A stretch of 64,000 nt of DNA, from contig CM097888.1 of the NCBI GenBank assembly GCA_044892525.1, forward strand, positions 69,812,001 through 69,876,000, read 5' to 3'. The notes beneath the pieces were generated by a model that saw nothing but the letters and a program-made list of their open reading frames with translations, had not been told where the DNA came from and did no database searches. The first letter of the stretch is position 1, and each line of letters begins with the position of its first letter. Position numbers and translations under genes: made by a program. This DNA comes from Schmidtea polychroa (lineage: Eukaryota). Positions 47,131 through 64,000 of this stretch are shown here, piece after piece.

Positions 47131-47880
47131 TCATTTCTCCCACTCCGAGTCTGCCAATAGATCTTCCAAATCGAAAAACTCAGAGGCATTTTCCTCCCAG
47201 GTAACACCAGCGGCGGAGATGATTCGCCCTGAGATCACTGATGCTAAATCGATTGCTGCAGGAGGGTTGATGACTTTGATTGGATGATCCGACGATCGCG
47301 GGTTCTGTTTGGCGGTTACGCGTTCCCGCTGTTTCTTTTTGCGTTCGGCTCTCGATAATTGCCGACGCTTTGGTTTCGATGCCGTTGGATTGGTCGGGGG
47401 TGCTGCGGAGGTGGATGCTATCGCAGGTAGCACGTTACTGGTTCCGGTAAAGATGATTTCTGGTTCTTTAGGTGAGAGCTCGGTCTCTACGCACCCATGG
47501 CAAGGCTTTCCGACTGGAGAAGAAGACCCGCCCGAGATATCATGATGCGCTGGGAAGAGATTACCGGCTTCATTACTTGGGATCTTCGCGATCTTCCTTG
47601 TAATTGCTGCCTGGACGTATAATTTGTGCAGCGCCTCCGACTGCTCTTTTATCAGGCTCCTCTGCGCCCGACTCTCGGAAATCAACGCGTCTCTACAGTG
47701 CTCGCTTCGGTGCAGCTTCTTCTGAGCCTCCTTCATCTGGGTGGGACTGAACCATGTCCCCTCTAACTCATCTATCTTTCTTTTGTGCTTTCCGATCTGG
47801 GCCTGGAGCTCCTTGATAATTGAATTCTTGTCGGAGCAAGAAAAACAAGGTCGAAGAACGGTCTTGGAATTTGGCAACAT
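47131..47880 (-). CDS. 249-aa accessory protein: CxxC, coiled coil, CxxC, basic NLS-like patch, acidic-aromatic tail
   Basis: Intact ORF preceded by a strong acceptor TTATTCTCATTTTCCATTTTTTCCACAG, 8 nt before ATG. No family recognised. Confidence 0.6.
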   Translation of the reverse strand: MLPNSKTVLRPCFSCSDKNSIIKELQAQIGKHKRKIDELEGTWFSPTQMKEAQKKLHRSEHCRDALISESRAQRSLIKEQSEALHKLYVQAAITRKIAKIPSNEAGNLFPAHHDISGGSSSPVGKPCHGCVETELSPKEPEIIFTGTSNVLPAIASTSAAPPTNPTASKPKRRQLSRAERKKKQRERVTAKQNPRSSDHPIKVINPPAAIDLASVISGRIISAAGVTWEENASEFFDLEDLLADSEWEK

Positions 47881-50800
47881 TTGAGTGACTGTGGAAAAAA
47901 TGGAAAATGAGAATAATTAAATCGACGTGAGTGTCACCATCTAACCACATTCCGACTTTACTGATCATAGACAAAGATATGGGTTTACTAGTCAAGACAA
48001 GTTCTACTGTACGATGGATCCTCATACCTTTTGGATCTTTAATTGTAAGAGGATAAATCGATCAAACCAAATTTCGTACAAGGAAAGGAAGGTATTACCA
48101 TTTGTGAGAGAAATTCTAGGTCGATGAAAATGATTATTTAGTTAATCCGCTTGCAATCATTATCTCACGTTTACTGAGAGTCGAATTAAATTGTTGACTT
48201 TTCCCCCCGAACGAGTGATTTTGATGAGTGCATCATATACTGGGGTCGAGTGACTATCTATGGAAAAAGGGGTCCATAATGTCCGTTGATCAGTTCCTAC
48301 CGGATAAACGGAAAGTTATTTAATTTTTTAATTATTTATTCATTCTCTCTAATTACTCACATATGTGTTTTACCTGGTTTAAATAATATTCGATATTAAT
48401 ACTAATGATAATTATGTCAAAAATTGAAATAATTTCTGTGCCATTCATGCTAAGATAATAAAGAGAGAATAATCATAATTATGATCGGGTTTGGCATTAA
48501 AAATTATTGTCTTTATGATAACCGAGCACGGTATCAATGTGAGCTAGAAGCCGACCATTCCTGCTAGGTAGATAAGGAAATGTCAGCCCGGTGGTTGACT
48601 ATTAATCCGGAGCGGTGAAATCCGATACCTGTCGGTAGTTTAATTAGTTAATAGAAATTCCATCTGGTATGTTCAGTCTGATTTTACATGAGTAGGGACG
48701 GGTGTGACTTTACCCACTGCGCTTGGCTACTGTGTATGTCTGCAACTGGTGACGCATGCAAGGTGCGCTTTCACACACTTAATTATGCTACAAATGTATG
48801 TGTTCAATGTTTGCATGATGGCATTTCTCAGAATTTTATCTACCGCGAAATCGCTCACAGTTCTACTGCATATGATGATGATTTACTAATTCTCACCGGA
48901 TTATTGGAAAAATTATAATTATCTGTATTGCAAATGTTGGATATAGCTTGCTCCAAGGGTGGATTTTTCGTCTTTAATTCCTCAAGCCTAGTTTATCAAT
49001 CTACTCTCTAAGTGCTGGAGGATTTTTTCTATCTCTGCTGGATTGCCAACCTCATGTAATACTGGAATTTTGTATTTAACAAGATTATCGGCTAACTTGA
49101 AGAAATATATTTTCTTGGTTCGAATTGGTTGCATTTTTCATTGTTAAATTAGTTGATGCCAATAGTTTATGTAATTAGGATAATTAATTGTATGTAAATT
49201 CTTTTATATATAATTCTAAAAATTTATGATAGAGAATCATTTTATGTAATTTAAACGTTCATTTGGAACAAACTCGTTTTATGCAATTCTGAATCACTTT
49301 TTGGATTAAATCATTTTACATGGTTCTACCATTTATTCACAAGCAGTCATTTCGAGTAATCCTAATACTTATCTGAAGCCATCTACTTTGAACTCCCTTG
49401 CAACTATGTCTTTAAGAGAACTTTTAGATGAACGGAATAACAGTTCAGAAGGTCATAGGCTAAAAATTAGTCGGAACAGATTCTGAGTGAAAAATATGAA
49501 CCTCGAAGATATGTCACAGATAGCCTCACTAAGGTTTGAACAATTCTTGACGCACAACTTACATTGATGATGGAGAAAATTTTCTTAGCAAAAACGACAT
49601 TCAAAAACGATAGTGTGACACCCTCAATCACTGCGCGAATACATCAAAATTCTCCGATTCCCTTATTACATATCTTTGTTTTCAATCACTACATGACTAT
49701 CAATTTTCTGCCACCATTTACCTATAGATTTTAGTCGCACCTTCAGCAATTGGACCCGTGAAGAAGCCTTCACATTTCGGCCCAATCTAGCTGCGTGATT
49801 GAAATACCCTATGTCCACCGGTGGAGCTCCCGAAGGCACCTCACACCATGACATAGAGTATCTCAACGCCACGTTTCTCGCAAAATTGAATAGTCTCCAA
49901 TAATAATTCATAAAAATTGATTCGTAAAAGATCAATAATTCTTAACGAGCAAATCATTTATTATTAAGCAAATTATTAATTTAAATAAAGCATTCTAAAA
50001 TCAAACGAAAAGAAAAACCATTTTTCAAATTAAAAATATAATTAAACTATACGCATTACTTAAAAATTCAAAATAAGCAATCAAAAATCCTTATCGAATG
50101 ATTGATACTAGTATGGGCTGAGTCGAAAAGGGTACTATGTCAAATCAGTTAATGCTTGAATATCGTCTAGTTCTGTAAAAATCTCTTGAATCTTGGAATT
50201 GTCCTCGTGAGTTATCGTGCGTTAGTTGCTGGAGTTCTGTTCTGTCGTAGAATAGATTTACCTATTGAGGTGGTTTGATTAACAGTAGTTGTTATGTTTT
50301 TAATGCCTGCTTATATATTAATTTTTTGTTTGCGCGGACCAATTAGAATTGAGTACCGCTTAATTTTATTAATTTAATTTATTTTCCTTGTTTTTGAGTT
50401 ATTTCTTCTTATTTTCTTTATTAAAATTATGTTTTTATTTATTTTCCTTAATTTTCTTATTATTTACTATATTTTACGTTGTTTTCCGCCATTCTATTGT
50501 CCTATTTTAATTTTTTCTCATCTTTATATTTTTTGTTTTAATTCCTATTTTCTAATTATTGTTTTTCTTATGTTTTATTCTATTTTATTTGTCAATTTAT
50601 TTGTTTTTATTTTTTATTTTATTTTAGTTAAGTTTGCCCTAATTTCCCAACTACCCTTCGACTCAGCCCAACAAATCACTCGGGGACCCATCAAAATTGC
50701 GTCCCGCAATTGCATAGTTATCTTACTTCATGCATTCATAAAAAGGATATATCGAAACAATTATACTACAATAACAAAAACAATTTTATTCTAAGATATA

Positions 50801-50906: not shown

Positions 50907-51566
50907 CTAACCATTTGATGCTTCTGCTGACGGTTGTTGGTTGGTTTGGGTATTGGTGTTGAGATAGGTCTGATTGTTAGAATTCGGCTGGATTGGTTGG
51001 TTACTCGGGATTCGAGGTCGGAATGGGGTTGGGTTAAGATTTGTCAGTGGCACTTCTTGAGGATTTCTGTTCGAGATTACTCTTATTGATGTCGAGATTC
51101 TGCATCTATTTCTAACTTCGTAGATCTTCATGAGTATTGGTAGACATAGGAGGAGGGTTTCTGCGATCACCACATATATGAGATAATGGGTGTCATTGAT
51201 TTCGGGAGGTGTTTTTGGTTTTTCTACAAGATTTTCAAAATTCTCTTGTTGCATTTGTTGTTCCAACTGGTCGAATTGTTGAATTTGTTCGAGGATTTGT
51301 TTGTTTATCATTTTACAAATGGGATTCTTTTTACACATTGTTTGGATGTTGTTGATGTGTGATCGGGTTGATTGAATGGTTTGGATGATATGGATTTTTA
51401 CTGTCATAGGGTATGTGCATTGGCCGGATTCTTGTTTAGGTTCTTGATTTTGATTTCGGTAATCTCGTACGATTTTCGGTTGGGCGTTTACTTGTTTGTT
51501 CTCCATCAGAATCATCAATACCGTTATTGTTATCATCATCTCGCCTCGCATGATACTATTATACAT
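50907..51566 (-). CDS. Predicted type I membrane protein (signal peptide, small ectodomain with Cys, one TM, Pro/Gln/Asn-rich tail)
   Basis: Hydrophobic MMITITVLMILM...VNA/QP, MCKKNPIC, TM YLIYVVIAETLLLCLPILM. Start could be 51551 or 51539. Confidence 0.7.
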   Translation of the reverse strand: MYNSIMRGEMMITITVLMILMENKQVNAQPKIVRDYRNQNQEPKQESGQCTYPMTVKIHIIQTIQSTRSHINNIQTMCKKNPICKMINKQILEQIQQFDQLEQQMQQENFENLVEKPKTPPEINDTHYLIYVVIAETLLLCLPILMKIYEVRNRCRISTSIRVISNRNPQEVPLTNLNPTPFRPRIPSNQPIQPNSNNQTYLNTNTQTNQQPSAEASNG

Positions 51567-51607: not shown

Positions 51608-52372
51608 TTAATGATTCTGGTTTGGGTTATTTTCGGCGATTCTCATCAGGGTGGATTCCGCTTTAATAACTCTGTGTCTTAACTCGGGCAGCATTTCCAA
51701 CTGTCTGTTCTTTTCACGGGCCTCCCTTTTCATGTGCCTTATCTCCTTTTTCAGCCTTCTAATTTCTTCCCGTTTTTTGTCGAGGTTCCTTTTTAGTTCG
51801 ATTTGTAGGAAATCTTGTTCGTTTTCCTGCGAAAGGTTTCGTTGTTGTTGTTGTTGTTGTTGTTTTCTCTCGATCTCTTGGTATTTGCGAATCCATTTCT
51901 TCATTTCCTCACTTTCTCGTTGTTTTTCCTCCAATTGTCGATTTAATTTATTTATAGTTATTTGGTGTTCTTTCGCCTTGGTTTTCCAATAATCCTGGAT
52001 TACTTCTTCTGCCTTGAAGCTTGCCCTCTCTTGCCATAGTTCCTCTGCAATCTTTTCCCAGTTTCTTCCTCGTGTTCGTTGTTCTTGCAACCATTCATTC
52101 TTCTCTTCCGCTTCCCTCTTTATTTCTCCTAACACTTCGCACTCCTTCTTTAGTATTTTAATCATTTTTCGGTCTTCTATATATTTGTTTATTAGTCGCT
52201 CGTTTTCGTCCTTCTCTTCCCGTAACTTGGCCTTTAACGTTTGTGTTTCTGTTGTTTCTGCCTCAATCTCTCCCTCTTCTACGTCGCTCGTAATTTCTAT
52301 TATTTCCTCGATTTTCATATCTGTAATATGTACAGTTAATGGTGCGCTATAGTGCGACTTATACATATACAT
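51608..52372 (-). CDS. Coiled-coil accessory protein (E/K/R/Q-rich)
   Basis: Intact 254-codon ORF with heptad-like charged composition. Likely start 52318 (MKIEE). Confidence 0.7.
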   Translation of the reverse strand: MYMYKSHYSAPLTVHITDMKIEEIIEITSDVEEGEIEAETTETQTLKAKLREEKDENERLINKYIEDRKMIKILKKECEVLGEIKREAEEKNEWLQEQRTRGRNWEKIAEELWQERASFKAEEVIQDYWKTKAKEHQITINKLNRQLEEKQRESEEMKKWIRKYQEIERKQQQQQQQRNLSQENEQDFLQIELKRNLDKKREEIRRLKKEIRHMKREAREKNRQLEMLPELRHRVIKAESTLMRIAENNPNQNH

Positions 52373-52503
52373 TTATATAAAATTTTAATAGTTCGGGTTA
52401 CAGTCCCTTGAATACTTTTACAATACTTTAATTTTTTTTTTTTTTTTTTTTTTTTTGTTTGGGATATACGTCCCGATTTTTGTCTTTATCTTTTTATTCA
52501 CCC

Positions 52504-53559
52504 TTATACGAAGGTTTCCTCCTGTCCCACATAACCTTCGTCACTATCGACCGCTGGATGCAACTGTATCGCAATAGGGTCATAGGGTAGGTAATATTGG
52601 GGGATTTGAGCTCTCAATTCATTAACTTCATCTCTTAGAGCTCGAGTGATATTCAGCTCTTCGTCGAGCAGATAAGTGAGATACCTTGTCTCTTCGTCTT
52701 TCGCCTCTACTTGTCTATCTAAGGCCTTGATTTTCTCGTCGCCCTTCCATTTTTCAATTTCTATTTCCAAGTTTTTGATATTTTCGGTATACATTTTCCT
52801 CTCGTTTTCTAATTTTCTGTTTTTTCCCGCTAGGACCATGTTTCTTTGTTCTAACGATCCTTGTAGTCCATTAAGGTCTCTTTTCATCTCTTCGACCTGA
52901 TTTACTAATTCCACAACCCGTCCTGCTTGCTGGGTTATCATCTCTTCCATTGCAGCATTCTCGTGCTCTCTTATGTCGCATTTTATTGCCAAATGTCGTT
53001 CAAACTCCATAGCCTTCATCTGCCATGTTTGGCTTCGGGCGGCGACCTTTTTCAACCGTTTCAGTTCTTCCTTTATTATTAAATTTTCCTCCCATTTACC
53101 CTGTTCGCTCTCATATCCGAGTCTCATGGGCAATTCTTTCATCTCTTTTTTCATTTCATTGCTTTGTCTTTTCCATTTTCTCGCTTCTGCCACTAAGTGC
53201 ATCATTTTCCTTCCTTCTATTTGCTTTTCCGCTTCGCGCTTGGTGTTCTCATCGGTAAGTCTCTTTCTCGCTTCCTGCACTAGCTGCTTTAAGTAGTGGC
53301 TGTGCGCTTCTTGGCGGGTATTTTCTAGTGACGCCCATTTTGATGCTCTTTTGCATGCTTCTGCTTCCGCTCTTAAGTTGTGTATTAACCATTGGTATTG
53401 ACTATTCTCATCCTCTCTAGCTTCTTCGATGTGATTTCGGGTGAGATTAGTTAGTTGGAACATTACTTTGTTCCATTTTTTGTTATGTTCTCGGGGAATT
53501 TGTGTCTTGTTGACATTGGTTGGGACTATCGCAGTTTCGGTTAGTTTCTCTTGTGTCAT
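52504..53559 (-). CDS. Coiled-coil accessory protein, 351 aa
   Basis: Intact ORF, long charged helical segments, acidic C-terminus (DSDEGY). Confidence 0.75.
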   Translation of the reverse strand: MTQEKLTETAIVPTNVNKTQIPREHNKKWNKVMFQLTNLTRNHIEEAREDENSQYQWLIHNLRAEAEACKRASKWASLENTRQEAHSHYLKQLVQEARKRLTDENTKREAEKQIEGRKMMHLVAEARKWKRQSNEMKKEMKELPMRLGYESEQGKWEENLIIKEELKRLKKVAARSQTWQMKAMEFERHLAIKCDIREHENAAMEEMITQQAGRVVELVNQVEEMKRDLNGLQGSLEQRNMVLAGKNRKLENERKMYTENIKNLEIEIEKWKGDEKIKALDRQVEAKDEETRYLTYLLDEELNITRALRDEVNELRAQIPQYYLPYDPIAIQLHPAVDSDEGYVGQEETFV

Positions 53560-53753: not shown

Positions 53754-55142
53754 TTACTCCGTTCTGCCCTTCTCCTCTTTCCTTACGGTCATCTTGATAT
53801 ACACCGTGCCATTTCTTGCCATATCTTCTACTTTTTGTTGTAGGATGAACGTAGGTGCTCCTGTTGCTGATCCTTCTTCTTCCGTAGGTCTCTGGTAACA
53901 CATTTGGTTTCCAGTTGTCTTGAAGCTTTGTTCGTGGATGTTTCGGTCATTCATTAGTGCAATATCGATTTTCGCCTGGAACGGCCACTCTATTATTTCG
54001 TCGTATTCTCCTTTACATAACAGAAAGAAAATCGAAAAGTGTGTGTCTAATCCGGTTCCGTCCCCGTTGGGATATATCTTCATTTTCATTTTGTACCCAT
54101 TTTTCCAAGAATGGAATGCAGGACTTGTTATTCTTGTCTCTTCTCCGGTTTTTGCTTTTCGTATTCTTTCCTTTACTCCCGTAATCTTCCATATGTAGGG
54201 TGCTGTTGGGGTTATCTCATTTAGATTTATTTCCCGTATTTTCTGATGTAGCTCCTTGGCCTGATTATTACTGATTTCTATTCGGTTTATTTGCATCTTT
54301 ATGTTTGCTCGGGCTTCTTCGAACGCTTCCCTTTCTTCTAGTAGTTCTTTGACTAACACTTTCAACGATGCTATCTCTATCTCCATTTGTTTTACTTTCT
54401 CCTCGCTTTCTTGTAACGCAGTCGACCACATTTCTGCGTGGGTTGAAGCATTTTCTACTAAATGATGTGGTAACTCCCCTCGGTGTAGTAGTTTCTGACA
54501 ACCCCATTTGCCTAGTACGCATGTCATTCTTTTCTTTTCACATTCCCTTAGATGCTGTGCCACCTTCATTATTTCCCCTTGGTTACATCCGTTTGGGCAT
54601 TCCCCACTGAACTCTGCACATACTCTCTCCTCTTGGACATTGTGATGTTTGAGGGTGAGATTTTTCCACGTATCTATTTCTCCACAGTGTTCACATCTTT
54701 CTAATCTCTCCTCACACTGCCTTTGATGCTCTTTTTCTTCGCTTGCTCGAATGGTTTTATGGCACCTTTCACACTGGCCAATTCTGTACATACATTCTCC
54801 CATATGTTGTACTACCTTCCATATTACTCCTTTCCATTCGCATGGGGCATTTTTGCATCCCAGGTTGGTGTTTAACATGTCTTTCACTGCGGCTTTATCC
54901 TCGTTAGTGTCTTCTAAACTCGATATTAGTGTCTCTTTACACACCGGGCACCTCTGTGGTCTATTCTTTATTGCTTCACTGATACATTCTTTACATACTC
55001 TGCATCCACATTGGGTTTGGTGGGGTTCTTTTAGTAACTTTTCACAGATTCCGCACATAACATGTTTGTGTATTCTGATCGTTGTAGATTTTCGGACTTG
55101 CTCGACAATCTCTCTGAACTCTTCTCTTTGTCGTTTATCCAT
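53754..55142 (-). CDS. TRAF-family protein (RING, TRAF Zn fingers, coiled coil, MATH/TRAF-C), intronless, 462 aa
   Basis: RING CGICEKLLKEPHQTQCGCRVCKEC...CPVC; Zn fingers CKNAPCEWKG..H...C and CEHC...H; MATH PYIWKITG...SPAFHSWKNGYKMKMKIYPNGDGTGLDTHFSIFFLLCKGEYDEIIEWPF. Confidence 0.95.
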   Translation of the reverse strand: MDKRQREEFREIVEQVRKSTTIRIHKHVMCGICEKLLKEPHQTQCGCRVCKECISEAIKNRPQRCPVCKETLISSLEDTNEDKAAVKDMLNTNLGCKNAPCEWKGVIWKVVQHMGECMYRIGQCERCHKTIRASEEKEHQRQCEERLERCEHCGEIDTWKNLTLKHHNVQEERVCAEFSGECPNGCNQGEIMKVAQHLRECEKKRMTCVLGKWGCQKLLHRGELPHHLVENASTHAEMWSTALQESEEKVKQMEIEIASLKVLVKELLEEREAFEEARANIKMQINRIEISNNQAKELHQKIREINLNEITPTAPYIWKITGVKERIRKAKTGEETRITSPAFHSWKNGYKMKMKIYPNGDGTGLDTHFSIFFLLCKGEYDEIIEWPFQAKIDIALMNDRNIHEQSFKTTGNQMCYQRPTEEEGSATGAPTFILQQKVEDMARNGTVYIKMTVRKEEKGRTE

Positions 55143-55880: not shown

Positions 55881-58800
55881 TTATCTTTGATTATTTTTAT
55901 TGTCGCCCCCCGTTATGATTAGGAAGGCCCCTGTTATTATTATCCCACTGATCCACATCATCTGCTTCACGCTTATATTCTCTGGTTTCTCCTTGTTCGT
56001 TAATGTTGATATCGCTTCTATACCTTTCTCGTTTCCTCTTTTGCCATTTCCTTTCATCATTTCCCGTATTCTTGCTATTTCCTCGTTCATACCCTCCTTT
56101 GCCATCTTTTGTATTTTTTCCATCTCTTCCTCCGAAACATAGTTGTCCTGAGCTTCCTCGCCGGTTTTCTTGTGCTTTCCTCCTTCGTTCTTTTCGTCGT
56201 GGTTTTTTCTTTTCTTTCCTCTTTTCCCTGGGTATCGTCGGCATTCTCTTTTTGATTCATTCCTCCAGATACAAACCGTGTATTCTTTCGGCGGCTGCTG
56301 CTGCGTCACATATTGATGGCATCTCTCACCTGGTCCTAATCTTGAAATACAGACTTTGTGCTCTCTTCTAGGTTGGAGCTGCGTTATTACTATTTCACCA
56401 CCTTTTCCTAGGTGTACCTCTTTTCCTTTAACGTTCGTTATTCTCTTCCCGTCTCGATTTCGGTATGCTTCTTGTATTCTTACTTCTGTTATTGGTTCTG
56501 TGTCCTCATTTATCAGTACTAGTTTCTGATACGCTCTAGACATGCATCTTCCTAGTATGCACCTTTCCTTTAAGTCCCATTCTTCCTTTAAATCCCACTG
56601 CTGCTCTTGTGCTTGCTTTTTCTTTTCTTGTTTTAGTTCATCCTCTTTGCTATCTTGATTCTCCGCTTCTTTGGTTTCTTTTATCGTTCTCGTCCCTCCA
56701 TGAGCTGTTACTAACTCTATCATGGTAAGCATAATTATCATTAATATCATATTTGTCTCTATTTCTTTGTTAGTGAAAGGTAGGCATACCCTCTGTTTTC
56801 CATTATTCGGTTTTTCCTCCTCTTTGGTCTTGGTTCCCGGGCTGTTTCCCTCTCTTTTCGTATCCAAATCCTTGTTTTCCGGTTTATCCTCTTCCGGTTC
56901 TCTTTTCCCTTTATCCTCTTTTCGGCCTTTTCCGTCATTGTCATCGTGTTTATCTCCCCCGCTGTCGTTTAAAATGTCGTCCTCGACATTTATATCGTTC
57001 AATAATCTGCGATATGCTGTTAGCACTCTGTTTCTTGCTAATTTTGCTTCGAATTCAAACTCTTTTCTACCCGTTGCAGCATGTCTCTTTCTATTCCATT
57101 CTTTAACTAACTCTCTCAATTGCATACGACGATGTTTCCCAATTCGTTGTTGCTCGTTCTGATTTTGCGTGAATTTTAGGTCTTCTCTATTTAATACTAT
57201 TAAAATAATTTTAGGCGTCCCCCCTTTAGTTAGGGTATTCTTTACCATCGCATTTTCTCCGTTTTCGTAGAATTCGTTTACATTTATCGCATATTTATTA
57301 TTTTGTGGTACCTTCCATGTTAATAATAATTTCATTGCTTCTAGATTTTTCCGTACCGTATTCCATTGAAATTGAGATGTGTTTTTGCACATATTCTCAA
57401 CTTCTTCTTTTGTCGCATTTTTGCAAATAAATCTGATCATTTCTAAGTTTGGCTGTATGGTTGCCCAGTCCAATGTGGAGTTCCCTTCGTTTGATTTTTC
57501 GTCTAGTCTCGATCCTGATTGATGTAAGATGTGGAGTGTTTTTGGGTGTATTTTCGTTATAGCTGCATACATCATGGCGGTTTCACCTTGTTCATTTTTC
57601 GTGTTGGTTTCCTCACCCATCTCCCCAAGGATTCTCATGATCGTTATTGCTCTATTCTCTTTTGCAGCTAGTATTGCTTGTTGTAGAGGTGTTCTGGAAT
57701 CCTTTGTTACCATCGTAAATGCTCGAGGCAAGAAGGTTTTGATTTTCCCGATATCTAAACCCGTGGTTTGATCTCTTGCGTATGTGTGTACGGCTTTTAT
57801 TATTTTGGACAATATTATTTCGTCTGGCAGCTCTAGCATTTCCTCAAAGAACACTTCTTTTGCTTTGCGTATTATTGCCTCTTGATCTATACTCATTGAT
57901 TTGGTTTCGATGACGTTGTTTGTGACCGTTTGGTTCGTTGTTGACTTTGATTCCCTTGATTTCTCATACCTTATTTTCGTTTTCTTTCCGTTTGGATTAT
58001 TGATTCGTTCCTCTGCTGTAAGTATTTGGATAATATCCAGGTAATTCTCGCGGATGTTATTCATTGTGTCCATCATATATAACACACTTACCGTTTCCCA
58101 ATATTTATTTCGTACTTGGTTAGTAAATTGGAATATTGATTTTTCGAATGTGTCGATTCGCTTTTTTGCTAACTGTTCATCTTTATGATTTGTGAATTTT
58201 ATCCCTCGTTCTAGTAATTGATTCGGAATTTCGAATAAATGATGTCCTTTCATAGCTTCTCTCATCAGCGTGTTCTCTCCTCTCGTGAACGCTTCGTTTA
58301 CGTTGATCATATAATCGTTTTGAATTGGATTTCTCCATGTAATTAATATTCCGGTAATTGTTGTCAGTTTCTCTTTGATCGCTGTTAATAATCCATCATA
58401 CATGTTTCCGACTTCTCGATTGTCCTCATATGATAGTAGTTCCATCAACGACGTGAACGCCTCGGTACTTTTCCCTTCGATAGCATGATGTAGAGCGTTT
58501 TTCCGCTCGTGGTCTTGTGTAGTTATTTTCGATCCAGTATCGAGTAATGCGGTTATAATGTCTTTTGTTTTGCCTCTGTTTGCGGCTATCATTAATGGTG
58601 TGTAACCTTGGTTGTTTGTTTGTTCTGTTGATCGCTTGCAGTCGTGAAATGCTTCTATTGTTTCTAGTATTTGCTCGTTGTTACCTACTTTCATGAGTTT
58701 GTGTAATGGTGTGTCTCCGTAATGATCTGTTATTGTAAATAATATTGGCCATTGGCTTTTGACTACTCGCAATAATGGGTGTGTCCTTTCTCTATTTGCA

Positions 58801-61800
58801 TAGTTCTCGATCATCGTCAATAATCCTCCTAATATTTCGAAATCTAATCGATCTTTTGCCCATCCAGGTATTTTAATTTTTACCTCTTTTACAATCTTTT
58901 CCGCTTCTGATGGTTGGATACCCAATCGTCCGGTGATCGGTTCTGCGAGTTGTTGCATCATGTTCATTCTGTAGGTTTGCGAACGTGTGGTTAATGTACG
59001 GCCCTCTGGTTGACTAGTGGCTGTTTTTGGAATTGATTTGCATCGTGCTACGTTTACGTATATTGGCCTGGTAAATGGGTTATTTACCAATTTCACTCTT
59101 ACATTGGTTTCGCCTACGAATAAGATCTCATATGGTCCTTTTCCGTTGCGTTGTAACTTTTTTGTGGTTCCTGGAATTAATTCCGGGGTTTCTATCATTA
59201 CCCAATCACCTGTTTGAAACGTATGTTGCTTCACGTTTTTCTTTCGATCGTGTAAATCTTTATAACTTTCCTGGTAGAACTTGATATTTAATCCCGCAGT
59301 TTCCCAAATCTCCTGCATTCTTTCCTTGAATTTCGTAACATAATCGTCGATCTCCATATACTGCGATATCGGTGGTTGGTATTCCAGGTCCATTGGCATA
59401 TTACATTCTCTTCCGTACATTAATTTGAATGGGCTCATTTTCGTTGATGCGTGAATCGACATTCTGTACGCCATAAGACATAGGTTTATATATTCGTCCC
59501 AATCTCGTTGGTGACGGTCAACGTAGTTTGATAACATTTGTATAAGTGTTCCATTAAATCTTTCCGTCATCCCATTGGTTTGGGGGTGGTATGGAGATGT
59601 TCTTAGTTTTGCTATTTTGAAGTAATTTGTTACTTCGCTCATTATCTCACTCATAAAATTAGTTCCCTGATCGGTTAATATCTGTTTTGGTGTTCCATAT
59701 CGGCAACATATCTCTTCTACCAGAATTTTTGCGATTGTTTTAGCTTTTTGGTCTGGCATCGCGAATGCTTCTGGAAATTTCGTAAGAAAGTCGGTAATCA
59801 CTAAAATATAAACGTTTCCTCTATCCGATTCCGGTAATGGACCAACTACGTCCATTGATATCATCGTCATCGGCTCTATTGGTACGGGCATTGGCGTTAA
59901 AGGCGCTTTCCATTTTGATCCAGTATTTTTCCTGGTCGCACAAGTTAGGCAATTTTTTACCCATTCGGTTACATCTTCAGTTAACGTAGGCCAAAAATAT
60001 TTCTGTTTCATTCTTGCTAACGTCTTTTTCGATGACATATGTCCTCCCAATCTCCCATCGTGATATTGCGTTAGTAACTCTTTTCGTCGGTTTTCCGGTA
60101 TACACATTAATCGTTTTTCCCCATCCATTATCAGCAACCAATCTTTCTCTATAATATATCGGTGTCGGTGTTTATCCATATGTTCTTTTAATTTTTGGTC
60201 TTTCGCATATACATCTGTCTTTCCGGTTTTTACATAATCGATAATTTGTTTTAATTCCGCGTCCTCTTGTTGGTTCTTTCGCAATTGACAGAAATCTAGG
60301 TCTTCTGCTACCATTAGGCATATGCGTTGCATTTCTGAATCCACCAAATCTGGAAAAATAAATCTTGACATACAATCGGCGTTGGCATTTGCTCTTCCCG
60401 CTTTGAATTTTATAAATGGGGAGTATTCTTGCAATTGCATGGCCCATCTCATCAGTCTACTGGACGCTTCTTTATGTTGCCCTAACCACACTAATGGTTG
60501 ATGATCTGTGGTTATACATATCTCATGTCCCCATAGTAAATATCGGAAGTGTTTGATAGCTTGTATTATAGCCAATGCTTCTCGTTCTGTTACCGAATAG
60601 TTCTTTTCGTGCTTTTTGAATGTTCGACTGTAATACCCGATTACTCTCTCTTTTCCTTCATCGTCTAATTGTCCCAGAATCGCGCCTGCCGCGTACCCGC
60701 TTGCATCCGTTGCCAATAGAAATGGCTTCTTAAAATCTGGGTGTACTAGGATAGGTGCTTCGATTAGTTTATCTCTCAGCGTTTCAAACGCCTCTTGTTG
60801 TTCCTTCCCCCAAATGAACGAAATGTCCTTCTTTACTAATTCCTGGATTGGTTTTGCAATTTCTGCATAATTTTTTATAAATTTGCGATAGTATCCGCAT
60901 AATCCTAGAAATTCCTGAACTTGGGTGACAGTTTTCGGTGCTGGACATGTTTTTATTTTCTCAATGTTTCTTGGATCTGGCTCCTTTCCTTTAGCTGACA
61001 CTATGTGTCCTAAAAACGTGACTTTTTCCTTTGCCCAATCGCATTTTGATGGTTTGAGTTTGAGTTTCCACTGTCTTAATCTAATAAATACGTTTCGGAT
61101 ATCTTCCAGATGTTGTTCAAATGTCGCTGAATAGATTAGTAAATCATCAATATATACCATACATTGTTTGATTCCATGAGTGACAAAGTTCATACACCGT
61201 TGAAATGATGCTGGTGCGTTGGTCAGTCCGAATAGCATTTTCCTGAATTGATATAGATCTCGTCCCAACGTGAAAGCTGTTTTCTCTTTGTCCTCATCTT
61301 TGACTTTAATCTGCCAGTATCCACTTTTTAGATCTAAAGAAGTAAAATATGCTGCCCCTTGCAACATCAATAACATCTCATTGATGTCCGGCAATGGATA
61401 GGTATCTCTCTTGGTTACTGCGTTTAACTTCCGATAATCGATACAGAATCGTTGGGTGCCATCTTTCTTTTTTACCATGACCACTGGGAATTGCCAGGGT
61501 GAGCAACTTGGTTCGATTACTTTTGCGTCTAGCATCTTTTGTACTTCTGCTTCGGCTATTTCTTTTTGCATTTCTGCTAGCTTGTATGGTCTTAATGCAA
61601 TTGGAGTTTCATCTATGAGGGGTATTGCATGTAGGGTAACATCGCATGTACCCAAATCTAAATCTGAGATGGCGAATATATCTTTATATTCTACCAACAA
61701 TCGGTGCAATTTTTTCTTTTCATCATTCGTCAACAACATACTATCTATTGTCCATAATTCATCATCTTTGATCATCTCGTTGGTCACTTTCGGTAATTCT

Positions 61801-64000
61801 ATGTCCATCATTGGGGTCAATCTTCCCAATTTTTCGTTCTCATAAATGATTTTGTCTTCCTCTTCGAAATTCGTGATGTTGAGCGGTATCACTCCTTCTT
61901 GGTTTATTGTGATTATTTCCCTTGCGAGTGGTAACTCTCGTCGCTTTTCAAATGACTTGCTTGGTTCAAAGATAACTTCTCCTTCCATACCCGTATCCAC
62001 TTTTATCTGACAAATCATCTGCGATTTTGCTGGTACTATTATTTTTTCTGGACATCTGATTACTGCATTCATTTTGCATATTCTACCGGTTTTGTCTTTT
62101 AAACACATGGTGGTTAAGTCAATTACGACTTCTTTTAACAATTCTGGCATCAAATCCGTTCCGATTATGCATGGTACGCTAAGTTTTGGTATTACTGCCA
62201 AATACGTTTCAATTTCGTTGTCCTGGTATCTCAAAGTAGTCCACCATCTTCCGACCACGTCCACTGTTTCTTTACTACATGCTATGATGTGAATTGTTGT
62301 TGATTCGATATCTTTCCAGTGTTTACTGGGGATTTGATTAATCGCTATCGCTGATACATTAGCTCCGGTGTCTATCATAGCATTGGTTTCTTTACCATTG
62401 ATTTGAATCATAACTGTTACTGCTGGACCTCCAGGTAGACTCATTGCTGCTATTGTTCTTACGTCATCTGCTTGATCTACACTTTTGGTACGTCGTGTTG
62501 GCATATAATGCATACCGGGTTGACTCGGTAATTGCGGATACATATTTTGTGTCATGGTCAAAGCTGCTTGTGGTCCCACGATATCCGGTGGTATGTAGCT
62601 TCCATTGGCGATCCAGGTATTTGTCTTTTCCTTTTCCCAATATGGTGCCGTTTCCATTGGTTTTTCGTTTGGGTTTCTGTTTGGATATAGACATTTATCG
62701 TTCCCGTTATCGTCGTCGTCACTATCGCTGTTAGATGATTGGCTTCTAAATCGGTTCAAGAATTTTGGCTTATTCTTTTTCAATTGTCGTCTTGTTGCTT
62801 CATCGTACATTACTTTCCGGAATCGTCTGCCTACTTCTTCGTCGGTTCCTTTAATCTTTGTTAATATTTTAATCAATTGCTTTATCCGATGAATGTCTTT
62901 TGAGTGACCATGTAATACCATGGTTTTAGCTAAAAATGGTAGAAAGCCTACTATCATTTTCCAATTTACTTTCTTTTCTCGCTTGTATATATCAAAACAC
63001 GCTAACATTTGTGTTAGTTTTACTCTGACTATCTGAATTATGAGTATGATCCCTAATATCCCGGCCATCATTTGTCCAAAAACTAAGAATCTTCCCCACA
63101 TTGCTTTCATCATGTTCGATGTGGCTTGTTGAAAATGGTCTGGTGATAGTAGCAGCTCGTAATTCGGGCCTGATTGATAATTTGTTCCCCCCGTTATTGT
63201 AACCATATTTGACAAAATGGATTCTCGTCTGGCTGGGAAGAGTACGTTAAGTCGTGCTGTTTCTAGATCTTCTGGGGAATACATACCACCGTTTGACACG
63301 TCTATAGGTTTGAAATCCAGCTCTGTGGCGAGTTCTATTAATCCAAATTTCTTGGGCTCCTCGGATATGGTTTTTCCCGGTAACATCATCCATTTCCCAT
63401 CGGGTCTTTCATACAAAGGTCCGTATGCATTAGAACAGTTAAAGAGATTTGGGTAGAAACCCACTGGATTCATAATTCTAGTGACTGGTTGGACGAATCG
63501 ATTTTGTCCTTTATAACGGATTTCTAATTCATTTGCACATCTCTTTTCGGGTAGTATGGATTTTTCTGGCATTCGTGCATACGTCTTGGTACACTGGTAT
63601 GTGTACATCACTTCTCCTACCATTCTACCAAAATGTCCATCTGGTAATGGGAGTGATGGCATTGTGTTATCTGGGTGTGTTATCGCAATAGCTAACTTGG
63701 TTTTCAGTATTTCTTTATTCAATGAACAATCGTTTTGTATCAGATCGTAATATACTTTTTGCAAGGTCGTTTGTCCACGGTGAAATAGAAAATCCATTTT
63801 ATTATTTGCATATAAGTATAGTTTTACGTCCTCCGTTGCTATCTTTCCCACTGCTCTATCGATTATTTGTCTCGACATATAGATACCAGCGTAATTGGTT
63901 TTATATACTATACTGTCACATTTGGTGGTTTCTTTCTCTTTGATAAATCTCATACCTAGATCTGGATCGTCTGTGATTAATGCTGTTGGTGTCTTCTGCG
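55881..64000 (-). CDS. Polyprotein >2700 aa: chuvirus-like glycoprotein-TM-protease-RT-RNase H-integrase-2x ankyrin module-membrane tail; 5' end outside window
   Basis: The frame stays open upstream of ATG 63953 (QKTPTALITDDPDLG). G-like GEVMYTYQC..CANEL..FVQPVTRI..C..GKW; TM 63027-63089; DTG 62364-62372; YIDD 61143-61154; ATDASG ~60700; HHCC ~59937-60070; DVVGP, TDQG, ERFN integrase core; GPY ~59135; ankyrins DTPLH, GYTPLMIAA, KNALHHA. Confidence 0.95.
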   Translation of the reverse strand, partial: QKTPTALITDDPDLGMRFIKEKETTKCDSIVYKTNYAGIYMSRQIIDRAVGKIATEDVKLYLYANNKMDFLFHRGQTTLQKVYYDLIQNDCSLNKEILKTKLAIAITHPDNTMPSLPLPDGHFGRMVGEVMYTYQCTKTYARMPEKSILPEKRCANELEIRYKGQNRFVQPVTRIMNPVGFYPNLFNCSNAYGPLYERPDGKWMMLPGKTISEEPKKFGLIELATELDFKPIDVSNGGMYSPEDLETARLNVLFPARRESILSNMVTITGGTNYQSGPNYELLLSPDHFQQATSNMMKAMWGRFLVFGQMMAGILGIILIIQIVRVKLTQMLACFDIYKREKKVNWKMIVGFLPFLAKTMVLHGHSKDIHRIKQLIKILTKIKGTDEEVGRRFRKVMYDEATRRQLKKNKPKFLNRFRSQSSNSDSDDDDNGNDKCLYPNRNPNEKPMETAPYWEKEKTNTWIANGSYIPPDIVGPQAALTMTQNMYPQLPSQPGMHYMPTRRTKSVDQADDVRTIAAMSLPGGPAVTVMIQINGKETNAMIDTGANVSAIAINQIPSKHWKDIESTTIHIIACSKETVDVVGRWWTTLRYQDNEIETYLAVIPKLSVPCIIGTDLMPELLKEVVIDLTTMCLKDKTGRICKMNAVIRCPEKIIVPAKSQMICQIKVDTGMEGEVIFEPSKSFEKRRELPLAREIITINQEGVIPLNITNFEEEDKIIYENEKLGRLTPMMDIELPKVTNEMIKDDELWTIDSMLLTNDEKKKLHRLLVEYKDIFAISDLDLGTCDVTLHAIPLIDETPIALRPYKLAEMQKEIAEAEVQKMLDAKVIEPSCSPWQFPVVMVKKKDGTQRFCIDYRKLNAVTKRDTYPLPDINEMLLMLQGAAYFTSLDLKSGYWQIKVKDEDKEKTAFTLGRDLYQFRKMLFGLTNAPASFQRCMNFVTHGIKQCMVYIDDLLIYSATFEQHLEDIRNVFIRLRQWKLKLKPSKCDWAKEKVTFLGHIVSAKGKEPDPRNIEKIKTCPAPKTVTQVQEFLGLCGYYRKFIKNYAEIAKPIQELVKKDISFIWGKEQQEAFETLRDKLIEAPILVHPDFKKPFLLATDASGYAAGAILGQLDDEGKERVIGYYSRTFKKHEKNYSVTEREALAIIQAIKHFRYLLWGHEICITTDHQPLVWLGQHKEASSRLMRWAMQLQEYSPFIKFKAGRANANADCMSRFIFPDLVDSEMQRICLMVAEDLDFCQLRKNQQEDAELKQIIDYVKTGKTDVYAKDQKLKEHMDKHRHRYIIEKDWLLIMDGEKRLMCIPENRRKELLTQYHDGRLGGHMSSKKTLARMKQKYFWPTLTEDVTEWVKNCLTCATRKNTGSKWKAPLTPMPVPIEPMTMISMDVVGPLPESDRGNVYILVITDFLTKFPEAFAMPDQKAKTIAKILVEEICCRYGTPKQILTDQGTNFMSEIMSEVTNYFKIAKLRTSPYHPQTNGMTERFNGTLIQMLSNYVDRHQRDWDEYINLCLMAYRMSIHASTKMSPFKLMYGRECNMPMDLEYQPPISQYMEIDDYVTKFKERMQEIWETAGLNIKFYQESYKDLHDRKKNVKQHTFQTGDWVMIETPELIPGTTKKLQRNGKGPYEILFVGETNVRVKLVNNPFTRPIYVNVARCKSIPKTATSQPEGRTLTTRSQTYRMNMMQQLAEPITGRLGIQPSEAEKIVKEVKIKIPGWAKDRLDFEILGGLLTMIENYANRERTHPLLRVVKSQWPILFTITDHYGDTPLHKLMKVGNNEQILETIEAFHDCKRSTEQTNNQGYTPLMIAANRGKTKDIITALLDTGSKITTQDHERKNALHHAIEGKSTEAFTSLMELLSYEDNREVGNMYDGLLTAIKEKLTTITGILITWRNPIQNDYMINVNEAFTRGENTLMREAMKGHHLFEIPNQLLERGIKFTNHKDEQLAKKRIDTFEKSIFQFTNQVRNKYWETVSVLYMMDTMNNIRENYLDIIQILTAEERINNPNGKKTKIRYEKSRESKSTTNQTVTNNVIETKSMSIDQEAIIRKAKEVFFEEMLELPDEIILSKIIKAVHTYARDQTTGLDIGKIKTFLPRAFTMVTKDSRTPLQQAILAAKENRAITIMRILGEMGEETNTKNEQGETAMMYAAITKIHPKTLHILHQSGSRLDEKSNEGNSTLDWATIQPNLEMIRFICKNATKEEVENMCKNTSQFQWNTVRKNLEAMKLLLTWKVPQNNKYAINVNEFYENGENAMVKNTLTKGGTPKIILIVLNREDLKFTQNQNEQQRIGKHRRMQLRELVKEWNRKRHAATGRKEFEFEAKLARNRVLTAYRRLLNDINVEDDILNDSGGDKHDDNDGKGRKEDKGKREPEEDKPENKDLDTKREGNSPGTKTKEEEKPNNGKQRVCLPFTNKEIETNMILMIIMLTMIELVTAHGGTRTIKETKEAENQDSKEDELKQEKKKQAQEQQWDLKEEWDLKERCILGRCMSRAYQKLVLINEDTEPITEVRIQEAYRNRDGKRITNVKGKEVHLGKGGEIVITQLQPRREHKVCISRLGPGERCHQYVTQQQPPKEYTVCIWRNESKRECRRYPGKRGKKRKNHDEKNEGGKHKKTGEEAQDNYVSEEEMEKIQKMAKEGMNEEIARIREMMKGNGKRGNEKGIEAISTLTNKEKPENISVKQMMWISGIIITGAFLIITGGDNKNNQR

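What the first reader, a model, noticed from the sequence alone, without database searches (positions are those of the whole stretch)
62300..64000. Chuvirus-type fusion glycoprotein fused in frame upstream of the Gypsy protease (env before pol)
Seen: the first ~310 visible residues have the Cys and motif spacing C..VY.TNY; GEV.Y.YQC; C.NEL; F..P.TRI; C...Y...G.W; G.Y..FP.R and end in a TM helix (63027-63089). An acidic/Pro linker then leads, with no stop or frameshift, into the DTG protease. Known: this pattern matches Chuviridae/Monjiviricetes class III (gB-like) glycoproteins, which some BEL/Pao elements in insects (Anakin) have captured; env in LTR elements normally lies after integrase. 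Inference: G-TM-PR-RT-RH-IN in one chain would tether Pol to the inner face of the membrane carrying the fusogen until protease release, an unusual way to build an enveloped, possibly cell-to-cell infectious retroelement.
Basis: partly seen in the sequence, partly recalled or inferred. Interest (0 to 1): 0.93.

Follow-up and report, generated by a model that had tools for sequence, protein, structure and literature searches.

The report
Burro-like retroelement with in-frame envelope gene
The window's last 13 kb belong to a giant Gypsy-type endogenous retrovirus whose chuvirus-like fusion glycoprotein really is fused in frame ahead of the protease, but this env-before-pol design has already been described for planarian "Burro" elements and other invertebrate Gypsy elements.

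Summary
A minus-strand ORF runs without a stop from the window edge (64000) to 55881, at least 2705 codons. Its first ~340 residues match Pfam Monjiviricetes_fusion (E 6e-42, profile positions 258-579 of 653). A transmembrane helix follows at 62994-63095, then a linker, then PR-RT-RNaseH-IN of Ty3/Gypsy type, ankyrin repeats and a charged tail.

An AlphaFold model of the glycoprotein part (pLDDT 87) matches only herpesvirus gB among solved structures. Among viral models it matches chuvirus and mivirus glycoproteins best.

The in-frame join is not an accident of this copy. At least seven relatives with 38-48% identity carry G-PR-RT-RH-IN in one protein. Five of them, a pol-only fragment and the window element form a clade with 100/100 bootstrap support on RT-RH-IN. 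In twelve of fourteen relatives holding the start of the domain, a hydrophobic stretch sits at that start, so the polyprotein is probably threaded through the membrane.

The design is published: Burro elements (Arkhipova and Yushenova 2019), GAG-ENV-POL errantiviruses of flatworms, nematodes and bryozoans (Chary and Hayashi 2026), and nematode elements (Sacco 2022). I rate it a new member of a known kind, of moderate interest. Host, gag, LTRs and the N-terminal half of the glycoprotein lie outside the window.

The parts
55881..64000 (-). Visible part of the polyprotein ORF (at least 2705 codons). It is open at the window end and its stop codon is at 55881-55883.
   Evidence: no stop in 2705 codons, against 277 and 123 stops in the other two frames of the same strand.
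63096..63998 (-). C-terminal ~55% of the ectodomain of a Monjiviricetes/chuvirus-type class III (gB-like) fusion glycoprotein, aa 1-301. The model shows a long central helix, a beta-rich crown domain and a membrane-proximal helix.
   Evidence: Pfam PF24664, E 6e-42. AF2 pLDDT 86.9. Foldseek PDB top 50 are all herpesvirus gB. BFVD top hits are chuvirus and mivirus G, E down to 2e-16. 13 of 13 family-conserved residues are present.
62994..63095 (-). Transmembrane anchor of the glycoprotein (aa 302-335), the presumed stop-transfer segment.
   Evidence: Kyte-Doolittle maximum 2.27; helix 286-343 in the model.
62670..62993 (-). Cytoplasmic tail of the glycoprotein, still alignable to the family profile (aa 336-443, up to profile position 649 of 665).
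   Evidence: hmmsearch with the profile built from alignment A1.
62415..62669 (-). Linker between the end of the glycoprotein homology and the protease (aa 444-528). It carries a late-domain-like Y-P-x-L motif at 62529-62540.
   Evidence: No Pfam hit. Motif count against shuffles; this is a lead only.
62139..62414 (-). Retroviral-type aspartic protease (aa 529-620, D-T-G at aa 543).
   Evidence: Pfam RVP, E 5.5e-10.
61476..62138 (-). PR-RT spacer (aa 621-841). It is conserved among relatives at 28-30% identity and its fold is unknown.
   Evidence: Alignment A2. No dUTPase or other Pfam or PDB match, except that the RT N-terminus matches foamy-virus PR-RT.
60423..61475 (-). Reverse transcriptase (aa 842-1000, Y-x-D-D at aa 949) and Ty3/Gypsy-type RNase H (aa 1063-1192).
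   Evidence: Pfam RVT_1 5e-34, RT_RNaseH 4e-39, RT_RNaseH_2 3e-37.
59079..60101 (-). Integrase: H2C2 zinc domain (aa 1300-1358), catalytic core (aa 1375-1472) and a weak SH3-like C-terminal domain.
   Evidence: Pfam Integrase_H2C2 8e-21 and rve 2e-12; weak SH3_Tf2-1 and MLVIN_C.
57429..58679 (-). Two blocks of ankyrin repeats inside the polyprotein, after the integrase (aa ~1774-1853 and ~2096-2190).
   Evidence: Pfam Ank_2 4e-17, Ank_4, Ank_5.
55905..56762 (-). C-terminal module of the polyprotein: hydrophobic segment (aa 2413-2436), then 240 charged residues with 6 Cys, then a hydrophobic segment (aa 2677-2698) 7 residues before the stop.
   Evidence: The same pair of hydrophobic segments after IN recurs in six relatives. 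No sequence similarity. Single-sequence AF2 gave pLDDT 48.
53754..55142 (-). Accessory ORF of 462 aa: TRAF-like protein with an N-terminal RING and a C-terminal MATH domain.
   Evidence: Pfam TRAF-mep_MATH 2e-25, MATH_2 1e-24, zf-C3HC4 1e-4.
52432..53559 (-). Accessory ORF of 351 aa (52504-53559, no family match). Its stop is followed by AATAAA (52493-52498) and a ~30-nt poly(A) tract (52432-52463).
51608..52372 (-). Accessory ORF of 254 aa, Glu/Lys-rich and probably coiled coil.
   Evidence: (weak Fib_alpha, 0.002).
50907..51566 (-). Accessory ORF of 219 aa: hydrophobic N-terminus, one internal TM segment (aa ~128-148) and a Pro/Asn/Gln-rich tail. It looks like a small membrane protein. The A-rich coding-strand bias ends just below it.

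Best explanation
Window 50.9-64.0 kb (minus strand) is the 3' two-thirds of a giant, apparently intact Ty3/Gypsy-type endogenous retrovirus of the Burro-like kind, sitting in an AT-rich, transposon-dense animal genome.

A complete glycoprotein gene of the chuvirus/Monjiviricetes family, a class III gB-like fusogen, lies inside the polyprotein reading frame directly upstream of the protease. The order is (gag and other parts, off-window) - signal - G ectodomain - TM - tail and linker - PR - RT - RNase H - IN - ankyrin - C-terminal membrane module.

Proposed mechanism:
1. The polyprotein is translated as one chain.
2. An internal signal sequence at the start of G sends the ectodomain into the ER lumen.
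3. The TM helix at 62994-63095 stops transfer, so PR-RT-RH-IN stay on the cytosolic face, anchored to the membrane that carries the fusogen.
4. Signal peptidase on the lumenal side and the element's own protease on the cytosolic side then free the parts, much as in flavivirus polyproteins.
5. The result would be enveloped particles able to pass between cells.

Shown here: the homology, the fold, the uninterrupted frame, the conservation of the arrangement in a well-supported Pol clade, and the hydrophobic segments. Inferred: membrane topology, processing, budding and transfer.
For: Continuity and domain order.

Glycoprotein identity:
- Pfam E 6e-42.
- 683 homologues, of which the ~650-aa ones are viral G proteins at 20-29% identity.
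- The family profile hits only gB in the PDB.
- The AF2 model has pLDDT 86.9.
- Foldseek top 50 PDB hits are all gB, and PRV gB domain IV alone gives TM 0.51.
- BFVD top hits are Tacheng tick virus 4, a mivirus and chu-related G proteins.

Conservation of the fusion:
- Monjiviricetes_fusion, then PR, RT, RH and IN in one protein in P0003, P0008, P0018, P0021, P0152, P0154 and P0158.
- zf-CCHC or Retrotrans_gag upstream of G in the same protein in P0006 and P0013.
- The clade {window, P0152, P0158, P0154, P0003, P0008, P0159} has 100/100 NJ bootstrap on 789 RT-RH-IN columns.

Topology: a hydrophobic stretch sits at the start of the G domain in 12 of the 14 relatives that hold it, with 130-1350 residues preceding it. 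A TM follows ~560 aa later in most of them.

Element type: relative L001 has 98%-identical direct repeats 20.15 kb apart, so it is a giant LTR element.

Catalytic motifs of PR, RT and IN are present.

Literature: the same design is described for Burro (PMC6431247) and for GAG-ENV-POL errantiviruses (PMC13524379).
Against: - The N-terminal ~45% of the glycoprotein (fusion loops, signal), gag, the PBS and both LTRs are not in the window, so this copy cannot be shown to be complete or to be an LTR element.
- Signal-peptide and TM calls rest on hydropathy only.
- No transcript, protein or particle data are available.
- A spliced or otherwise separate env mRNA cannot be excluded.
- The host is not identified.
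- The dUTPase-like domain reported between PR and RT in Burro was not detected.
- The closest relatives are only 42-50% identical in Pol, so assignment to a named Burro family is open.
Confidence: 0.8

Rival explanations
1. Chance juxtaposition. An endogenous chuvirus glycoprotein fragment (a non-retroviral EVE), or a nested insertion or misassembly, happens to abut a Gypsy pol in frame in this one copy, with no functional link.
For: Chuvirus G-derived EVEs are common in arthropod genomes (PMC10084718 and PMC7642597). The window shows only one copy and no LTRs.
Against: The same G-to-PR in-frame order recurs in at least seven proteins that are only 38-48% identical to the window's in G and 42-44% in Pol. 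Five of these, with the window element, form a 100%-bootstrap Pol clade. The ORF has 2705 codons without a stop. Base composition is uniform across the junction.
Confidence: 0.03
2. The frame is continuous, but Env and Pol are made separately, from a spliced or internally initiated subgenomic mRNA or by co-translational cleavage only. Pol would then never be tethered to the membrane through G in any functional sense.
For: Retroviruses and errantiviruses normally express env from a spliced mRNA (general knowledge). In relatives L001 and L002, gag is a separate upstream ORF, so expression is not strictly one chain. Nothing in the sequence alone excludes splice sites.
Against: With env upstream of pol in one frame, removing env by splicing is not needed to make Pol. 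Making Env alone would need a stop that is absent. Keeping the frame open across a poorly conserved 90-880-aa linker in nine elements suggests that read-through translation is selected.
Confidence: 0.12
3. Domesticated or decaying copy. The locus is a host-co-opted fusogen or pol gene, or a dead relic, no longer part of a mobile element.
For: Only one copy is visible. The LTRs cannot be seen. Host-like genes (TRAF-like, ankyrin) are attached.
Against: All enzymatic motifs are intact, and 8.1 kb plus four downstream same-strand ORFs are open. Co-opted genes usually keep one domain and lose the rest. Burro elements carrying the same kinds of host-like domains are reported as abundant and transcribed transposons (PMC6431247; PMC8532177).
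Confidence: 0.05

Closest known systems
Burro / GYPSM1 giant Gypsy-like LTR retrotransposons of dugesiid planarians (Grohme et al. 2018; Jurka 2007; Arkhipova and Yushenova 2019, PMC6431247)
   Same: - A giant polyprotein ORF.
- An env homologue with hits to mononegavirus fusion glycoproteins, placed in frame directly before PR.
- Gypsy-type PR-RT-RH-IN.
- Ankyrin repeats and MATH/TRAF and RING-type host-like domains.
- Accessory ORFs that can alternatively be subdomains of the polyprotein.
- An AT-rich host genome.
   Different: - Here the TRAF-like protein is a separate ORF downstream of pol. It is inside ORF1 upstream of env in S. mediterranea Burro1, and an upstream ORF in the D. tigrina element.
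- No dUTPase-like match between PR and RT.
- Identity to the Burro consensus sequences could not be measured, because Repbase is not on hand.
- The host is unknown.
GAG-ENV-POL Ty3/gypsy 'errantiviruses' with HSV/gB-type ENV in Platyhelminthes, Nematoda and Bryozoa (Chary and Hayashi, eLife 2026, PMC13524379; Sacco et al. 2022, J Gen Virol 103:1739, cited there)
   Same: A gB-like class III Env lies between gag and pol of a Ty3/Gypsy element, with an RNA-virus-type glycoprotein captured by a metavirus.
   Different: Those reports describe ENV and POL as neighbouring ORFs, with gaps of up to 2 kb allowed. They searched only for elements with LTRs 5-14 kb apart. The element here fuses the two in one frame and belongs to a much larger class; relative L001 has LTRs 20 kb apart.
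Anakin (mosquito BEL/Pao element with a captured chuvirus glycoprotein; Dezordi et al. 2020, PMC7642597)
   Same: The same glycoprotein family was captured by an LTR retroelement.
   Different: Anakin's Pol is BEL/Pao, whereas here it is Ty3/Gypsy. No BEL/Pao-specific Pfam families are found. The host lineage is different. The position of env in Anakin was not checked here.
Atlas virus and related nematode belpaoviruses (Merchant et al. 2022, PMC9094657)
   Same: A single uninterrupted Gag-Pol-Env polyprotein of 2828 aa carries an RNA-virus-derived fusogen with a C-terminal TM. It is a precedent for Env translated in one chain with Pol.
   Different: Env is last in the chain and is a class II phlebovirus Gn-Gc type in a BEL/Pao backbone. 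Pol is therefore not downstream of the Env anchor.
Chuviridae/Jingchuvirales and other Monjiviricetes glycoproteins; herpesvirus gB
   Same: Family membership by Pfam and by fold: a central helix, a crown domain, a membrane-proximal region and a TM.
   Different: Viral G proteins are free-standing ~650-aa proteins with an N-terminal signal and their own stop. Identity is only 20-29% to viral G and 10-14% to gB.

Membership tests
Monjiviricetes_fusion (PF24664) / class III gB-like fusion glycoprotein | Significant match to the family profile | tested here: met
   143.8 bits against a cut-off of 27, E 6e-42, profile positions 258-579 of 653; 683 homologues.
Monjiviricetes_fusion (PF24664) / class III gB-like fusion glycoprotein | Family-conserved Cys, Gly, Pro and Trp positions retained | tested here: met
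   13 of 13 invariant or at least 90% conserved columns of the 91-sequence alignment are present in the visible part.
Monjiviricetes_fusion (PF24664) / class III gB-like fusion glycoprotein | Class III fold: central helix (domain III), crown (domain IV), C-terminal arm, TM anchor | tested here: met
   AF2 pLDDT 86.9. Foldseek PDB top 50 are all gB, E ~1e-4, prob ~1. Whole-chain TM scores are low (~0.3), but gB domain IV alone gives 0.51. BFVD chuvirus G gives TM ~0.5. TM anchor.
Monjiviricetes_fusion (PF24664) / class III gB-like fusion glycoprotein | Fusion domain with fusion loops (domains I-II) and a signal sequence | not testable with these tools
   These lie beyond the window end (profile positions 1-257). 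Relatives hold the full domain, with a hydrophobic stretch at its start.
Ty3/Gypsy (Metaviridae) LTR retrotransposon | Order PR-RT-RNase H-IN with Gypsy-type RNase H and an H2C2 integrase | tested here: met
   Pfam RVP, RVT_1, RT_RNaseH, RT_RNaseH_2, Integrase_H2C2 and rve in that order. The best Pol hits carry Ty3/Gypsy-type domain sets.
Ty3/Gypsy (Metaviridae) LTR retrotransposon | Long terminal repeats, PBS and PPT | not testable with these tools
   The 5' end is off-window and there is no internal repeat in the window. Relative L001 has 98%-identical repeats of at least 650 nt, 20.15 kb apart.
Ty3/Gypsy (Metaviridae) LTR retrotransposon | Gag with capsid and CCHC knuckle | not testable with these tools
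   Off-window. Relatives have zf-CCHC or Retrotrans_gag upstream, in the same protein or in a separate ORF.
Burro-like giant planarian Gypsy elements | Env homologue in frame between the upstream part of the polyprotein and PR | tested here: met
   definition from PMC6431247.
Burro-like giant planarian Gypsy elements | Giant polyprotein with host-like domains (ankyrin, MATH/TRAF, RING and others) and accessory ORFs | tested here: met
   The ORF has at least 2705 aa with ankyrin after IN. A TRAF-like RING+MATH ORF and three further ORFs lie downstream.
Burro-like giant planarian Gypsy elements | dUTPase-like domain between PR and RT | tested here: inconclusive
   A 220-aa conserved spacer exists, but there is no dUTPase match in Pfam at E up to 1 or in a PDB profile search. 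Its fold was not modelled.
Burro-like giant planarian Gypsy elements | Sequence identity to Burro1-4/GYPSM1; dugesiid planarian host | not testable with these tools
   No Repbase or planarian genome is on hand. Background GC of 24-32% fits the more than 70% A/T reported for S. mediterranea (PMC11410931). The protein searches found nothing above 50% identity and no named flatworm hit.
Anakin-type BEL/Pao elements with chuvirus G | BEL/Pao-type Pol | tested here: not met
   Pol carries Ty3/Gypsy Pfam families and no BEL/Pao family, and it clusters with Gypsy Pol proteins.

The most novel reading that the evidence does not exclude
The whole Pol clade may be obligately membrane-assembled.
- An internal signal, the G ectodomain and a stop-transfer TM would thread a Gag-Env-Pol chain through the ER membrane.
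- A late-domain-like motif in the cytosolic linker would recruit the budding machinery.
- Pol would reach the particle by being anchored to Env rather than fused to Gag.
- A second signal-ectodomain-anchor module at the very C-terminus would add another membrane protein at the place where errantiviruses normally carry env.

As far as the papers I read show, none of these points (internal signal, linker motif, C-terminal module) has been described.
Probability: 0.25. Interest if true: 0.6.

Novelty: new member of a known kind. Interest (0 to 1): 0.33.

Why it matters
It gives one more apparently intact example that retroelements have repeatedly taken fusogens from negative-strand RNA viruses. 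It also shows that one lineage wired the fusogen into the polyprotein ahead of the enzymes. These elements make up a sizeable share of planarian genomes and are expressed in somatic tissues (PMC8532177). How such a chain is threaded, cut and assembled is therefore a real open question about how enveloped retroelements are built. The comparative points gathered here make that question more concrete: the internal hydrophobic stretch at the start of G, the conserved open frame across a variable linker, and the recurring C-terminal hydrophobic pair. The basic architecture itself is not new.

Tried and rejected
- Self-comparison of 50-64 kb against the rest of the window found no repeat, so no LTR could be delimited.
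- Rfam found nothing in the window.
- The bacterial promoter/terminator scan of 46-51 kb is irrelevant to a eukaryotic element and gave background counts.
- Host identification failed. The Pol search gave only generic Gypsy hits of at most 50% identity. The TRAF-like ORF gave one unnamed hit. The G search restricted to long proteins gave three unnamed ENA proteins.
- The dUTPase test of the PR-RT spacer gave no Pfam hit. A four-sequence profile against the PDB hit only the RT N-terminus of foamy-virus PR-RT.
- Alignment A3, of the spacer against whole polyproteins, looked misaligned and was discarded.
- BLASTP of the post-integrase 1044 aa against seven relatives gave no hit. The window's accessory ORFs have no similarity in loci L001-L003.
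- A single-sequence AF2 model of the C-terminal module had pLDDT 48, so no fold search was run.
- The wider clade of all G-bearing elements including P0018 is not supported (22/100). This agrees with the published statement that GAG-ENV-POL elements are not monophyletic.
- Grohme et al. 2018 could not be read because it is not held. No supplements of PMC13524379 are held.

1. While thinking about the cytoplasmic tail I looked at the consensus line that the alignment tool printed for A1. Nothing in this report rests on it.
2. The three late-domain motif patterns used were typed from general knowledge, not from a tool.
3. It is not used here.

The motif count is therefore offered as a lead only.

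Full report
**1. What is there**

The minus strand carries one reading frame that is open from the window edge (frame starts at 63998) to a stop at 55881-55883. That is 2705 codons with no stop. The other two frames of the same strand contain 277 and 123 stops.

The 15 codons upstream of the first Met align with the glycoprotein of relatives. The ORF therefore continues beyond the window.

Coding-strand A-richness (AT skew -0.15 to -0.56 on the plus strand) and GC of 35-42% set the stretch ~51.0-64.0 kb apart from a background of 24-32% GC.

**2. Domain map (numbering from 63998)**

| Feature | Residues | Evidence |
|---|---|---|
| Monjiviricetes_fusion PF24664 | aa 14-339 | E 6e-42, 143.8 bits vs cut-off 27, profile 258-579 of 653 |
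| RVP protease | 529-620 | D-T-G at 543 |
| RVT_1 | 842-1000 | Y-x-D-D at 949 |
| RT_RNaseH | 1088-1192 | |
| Integrase_H2C2 | 1300-1358 | |
| rve | 1375-1472 | |
| Ankyrin repeats | ~1774-1853 and ~2096-2190 | |
| Lys/Glu-rich tail | to the stop | |

- The only strong hydrophobic stretch in the first 2400 residues is aa 302-335, nt 62994-63095.
- A profile built from 91 family members aligns the window protein up to aa 443, profile position 649 of 665. Essentially the whole viral cytoplasmic tail is present before an ~85-aa linker to the protease.
- All 13 invariant or nearly invariant family residues in the visible part are kept.

**3. Fold**

- An AlphaFold2 model of aa 1-345 with that alignment has mean pLDDT 86.9. 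It shows a 48-residue central helix, a beta-rich domain, membrane-proximal helices and the TM helix.
- Against solved structures, the top 50 Foldseek matches are all herpesvirus gB (E ~1e-4, probability ~1).
- Whole-chain TM scores are low (~0.3), as expected for half of a multi-domain protein. Isolated gB domain IV gives 0.51.
- The family profile also hits only gB by sequence in the PDB (E ~1e-3).
- Against viral models the best matches are the glycoproteins of Tacheng tick virus 4, a mivirus, and chu-, qin- and xinmo-related viruses (E down to 2e-16, TM ~0.5). Rhabdo-like, Borna and gB proteins come further down.
- The class III, chuvirus-type assignment holds for the visible half. The fusion domain itself is off-window.

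**4. Is the in-frame join real and selected?**

A full HMMER scan of 1.84 billion representatives with aa 1-345 gave 683 hits.

- The ~650-aa hits, at 20-29% identity, have the size of free-standing viral G proteins.
- The best hits, at 33-48% identity, are mostly long. Eleven of the top 21 exceed 1200 aa, with the G region internal.

Pfam shows Monjiviricetes_fusion followed by one to three protease copies, RT, RNase H and integrase within one protein in P0003, P0008, P0018, P0021, P0152, P0154 (4844 aa) and P0158 (4029 aa). A CCHC knuckle (P0006) or Retrotrans_gag (P0013) lies upstream of G in the same protein.

These proteins are only 42-44% identical to the window's Pol. In a neighbour-joining tree of 789 RT-RH-IN columns and 49 Gypsy Pol sequences, the window element groups with P0152, P0158, P0154, P0003, P0008 and the pol-only fragment P0159, with 100/100 bootstrap support. 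P0018 falls outside.

The arrangement is therefore an old, maintained trait of a lineage, not an artefact of this copy.

Relative L001 carries 98%-identical direct repeats 20.15 kb apart, that is, LTRs of a giant element. L001 and L002 have a separate gag-like ORF just upstream. All three fetched loci have accessory ORFs downstream, for example RNase_T-like.

**5. How it most likely works**

In 12 of the 14 long relatives that hold the beginning of the G domain, a hydrophobic stretch sits exactly at that beginning, although 130-1350 residues precede it. In most of them a TM follows ~560 residues later.

This is the signature of an internal signal followed by a stop-transfer anchor.

- The upstream part and PR-RT-RH-IN would lie in the cytosol.
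- The G ectodomain would lie in the lumen, as in flavivirus-type polyproteins.
- Release would need signal peptidase on one side and the element's protease on the other.

It is inferred, not shown.

The TM-to-PR linker varies from 90 to 880 residues yet stays open in nine elements. Seven of the nine contain at least one late-domain-like motif, where 0.02-0.25 per motif type would be expected by chance in each linker. The window's motif is at 62529-62540. The patterns came from general knowledge, so this is a lead only.

**6. Comparison with what is known**

- Arkhipova and Yushenova (2019, PMC6431247) annotated the planarian Burro/GYPSM1 elements. These have a 4873-aa ORF1 with Gag, MATH_TRAF, SUMO-like and BCL2-like parts. 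[quoted passage not shown] - Chary and Hayashi (eLife 2026, PMC13524379) report that Ty3/gypsy errantiviruses of Platyhelminthes, Nematoda and Bryozoa carry only gB-type ENV, arranged GAG-ENV-POL. They also find chuvirus-like glycoproteins next to gypsy POL in arthropods. They cite Sacco et al. 2022 for nematode elements.
- Atlas virus is a precedent for a single Gag-Pol-Env chain (PMC9094657).
The window's Pol is Gypsy type, not BEL/Pao.

The window element shares the defining Burro features that can be tested: the in-frame env before PR, the giant ORF, the ankyrin repeats, and a TRAF-like RING+MATH protein.

It differs in three ways:
- The TRAF-like protein is a separate ORF downstream of pol.
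- No dUTPase-like match is detectable.
- Nothing above 50% identity exists in the protein collections searched.

Identity to the Burro reference sequences, and the host species, could not be tested. The AT-rich, hAT/piggyBac/Tc5-littered background is compatible with a planarian genome (PMC11410931) but proves nothing.

**7. Verdict**

- The kind is already published, so I file this as a new member of a known kind, possibly a copy of an already catalogued Burro family.
- Interest is moderate, and it rests on the mechanistic details noted in sections 5 and 8.

**8. Also seen**

- A pair of hydrophobic segments in the post-integrase extension, which recurs across relatives.
- A processed-mRNA signature (AATAAA plus poly(A)) inside the element.
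- A small membrane-protein ORF.
- Unrelated old Gypsy fragments.

**9. Slips**

I looked at a tool-printed consensus line while thinking. None of these supports a conclusion here.

No gene of the element in the window is broken.

Noticed in passing
window 55905-56762 (-); relatives P0003, P0008, P0018, P0152, P0154, P0158: The polyprotein ends with hydrophobic segment, then 240 charged residues with 6 Cys, then a second hydrophobic segment 7 residues before the stop. A comparable pair of hydrophobic segments after the integrase recurs in six relatives, although the sequences are not alignable. It looks like a second signal-ectodomain-anchor module at the position where errantiviruses usually carry env.
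   Followed up: partly
window 52432-52506 (-): The stop codon of the 351-aa accessory ORF is followed within 6 nt by AATAAA, and 30 nt later by a ~30-nt poly(A) tract encoded in the DNA. This is the mark of a processed host mRNA captured into the element. The A-rich same-strand ORFs continue beyond it.
   Followed up: partly
window 53754-55142 (-): An intronless TRAF-like ORF (RING plus MATH, 462 aa) lies inside the element, downstream of pol. Burro elements are reported to carry MATH_TRAF either inside ORF1 or as an upstream ORF. The only database hit is one unnamed protein at 37% identity.
   Followed up: partly
window 50907-51566 (-): The last same-strand ORF (219 aa) has a hydrophobic N-terminus, one internal TM segment and a Pro/Asn/Gln-rich tail. 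It looks like a small membrane protein. It has no family match.
   Followed up: no
window 62529-62540 (-) and the TM-to-PR linkers of relatives: Late-domain-like short motifs occur in the cytosolic linker of 7 of 9 elements, against 0.02-0.25 per motif type expected by chance in each. The patterns came from general knowledge, so this is only a lead.
   Followed up: partly
relatives P0003, P0006, P0013, P0154: Several relatives carry two or three protease domains in tandem between G and RT. The window element has one by Pfam, plus a second D-T-G tripeptide at aa 668 in the spacer that relatives do not share.
   Followed up: no
window 12310-13431 (+), 29262-29845 (+): Weak (24-28% identity) RT/RNase H-like and integrase-like fragments of other, unrelated LTR elements.
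   Followed up: no
window 9206-9856 (+), 30542-31285 (-), 39330-40217 (-), 40397-41182 (-): Remnants of DNA transposons: two hAT dimerisation domains, one piggyBac-type DDE_Tnp_1_7 and one Tc5/pogo HTH. The neighbourhood is a transposon graveyard. Two N runs lie at 3861-4109 and 15432-15689.
   Followed up: no
window 46500-48000: A GC-rich island (44-47%) holds a 249-aa minus-strand ORF (47131-47880) with no family match. It lies between the element's last ORF and the AT-rich background, and could be part of the element's 3' region or LTR, or something else.
   Followed up: no
P0008 (HBK71150.1): A 2627-aa G-PR-RT-RH-IN polyprotein of this clade is deposited as a hypothetical protein of a Flavobacteriaceae metagenome-assembled genome. 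That is almost certainly a mis-binned eukaryotic contig.
   Followed up: no
L001 20304-21005: The giant relative in L001 carries two small ORFs with prolyl 4-hydroxylase alpha N-terminal domains between its pol and its 3' LTR. This is another apparent host-gene capture.
   Followed up: no
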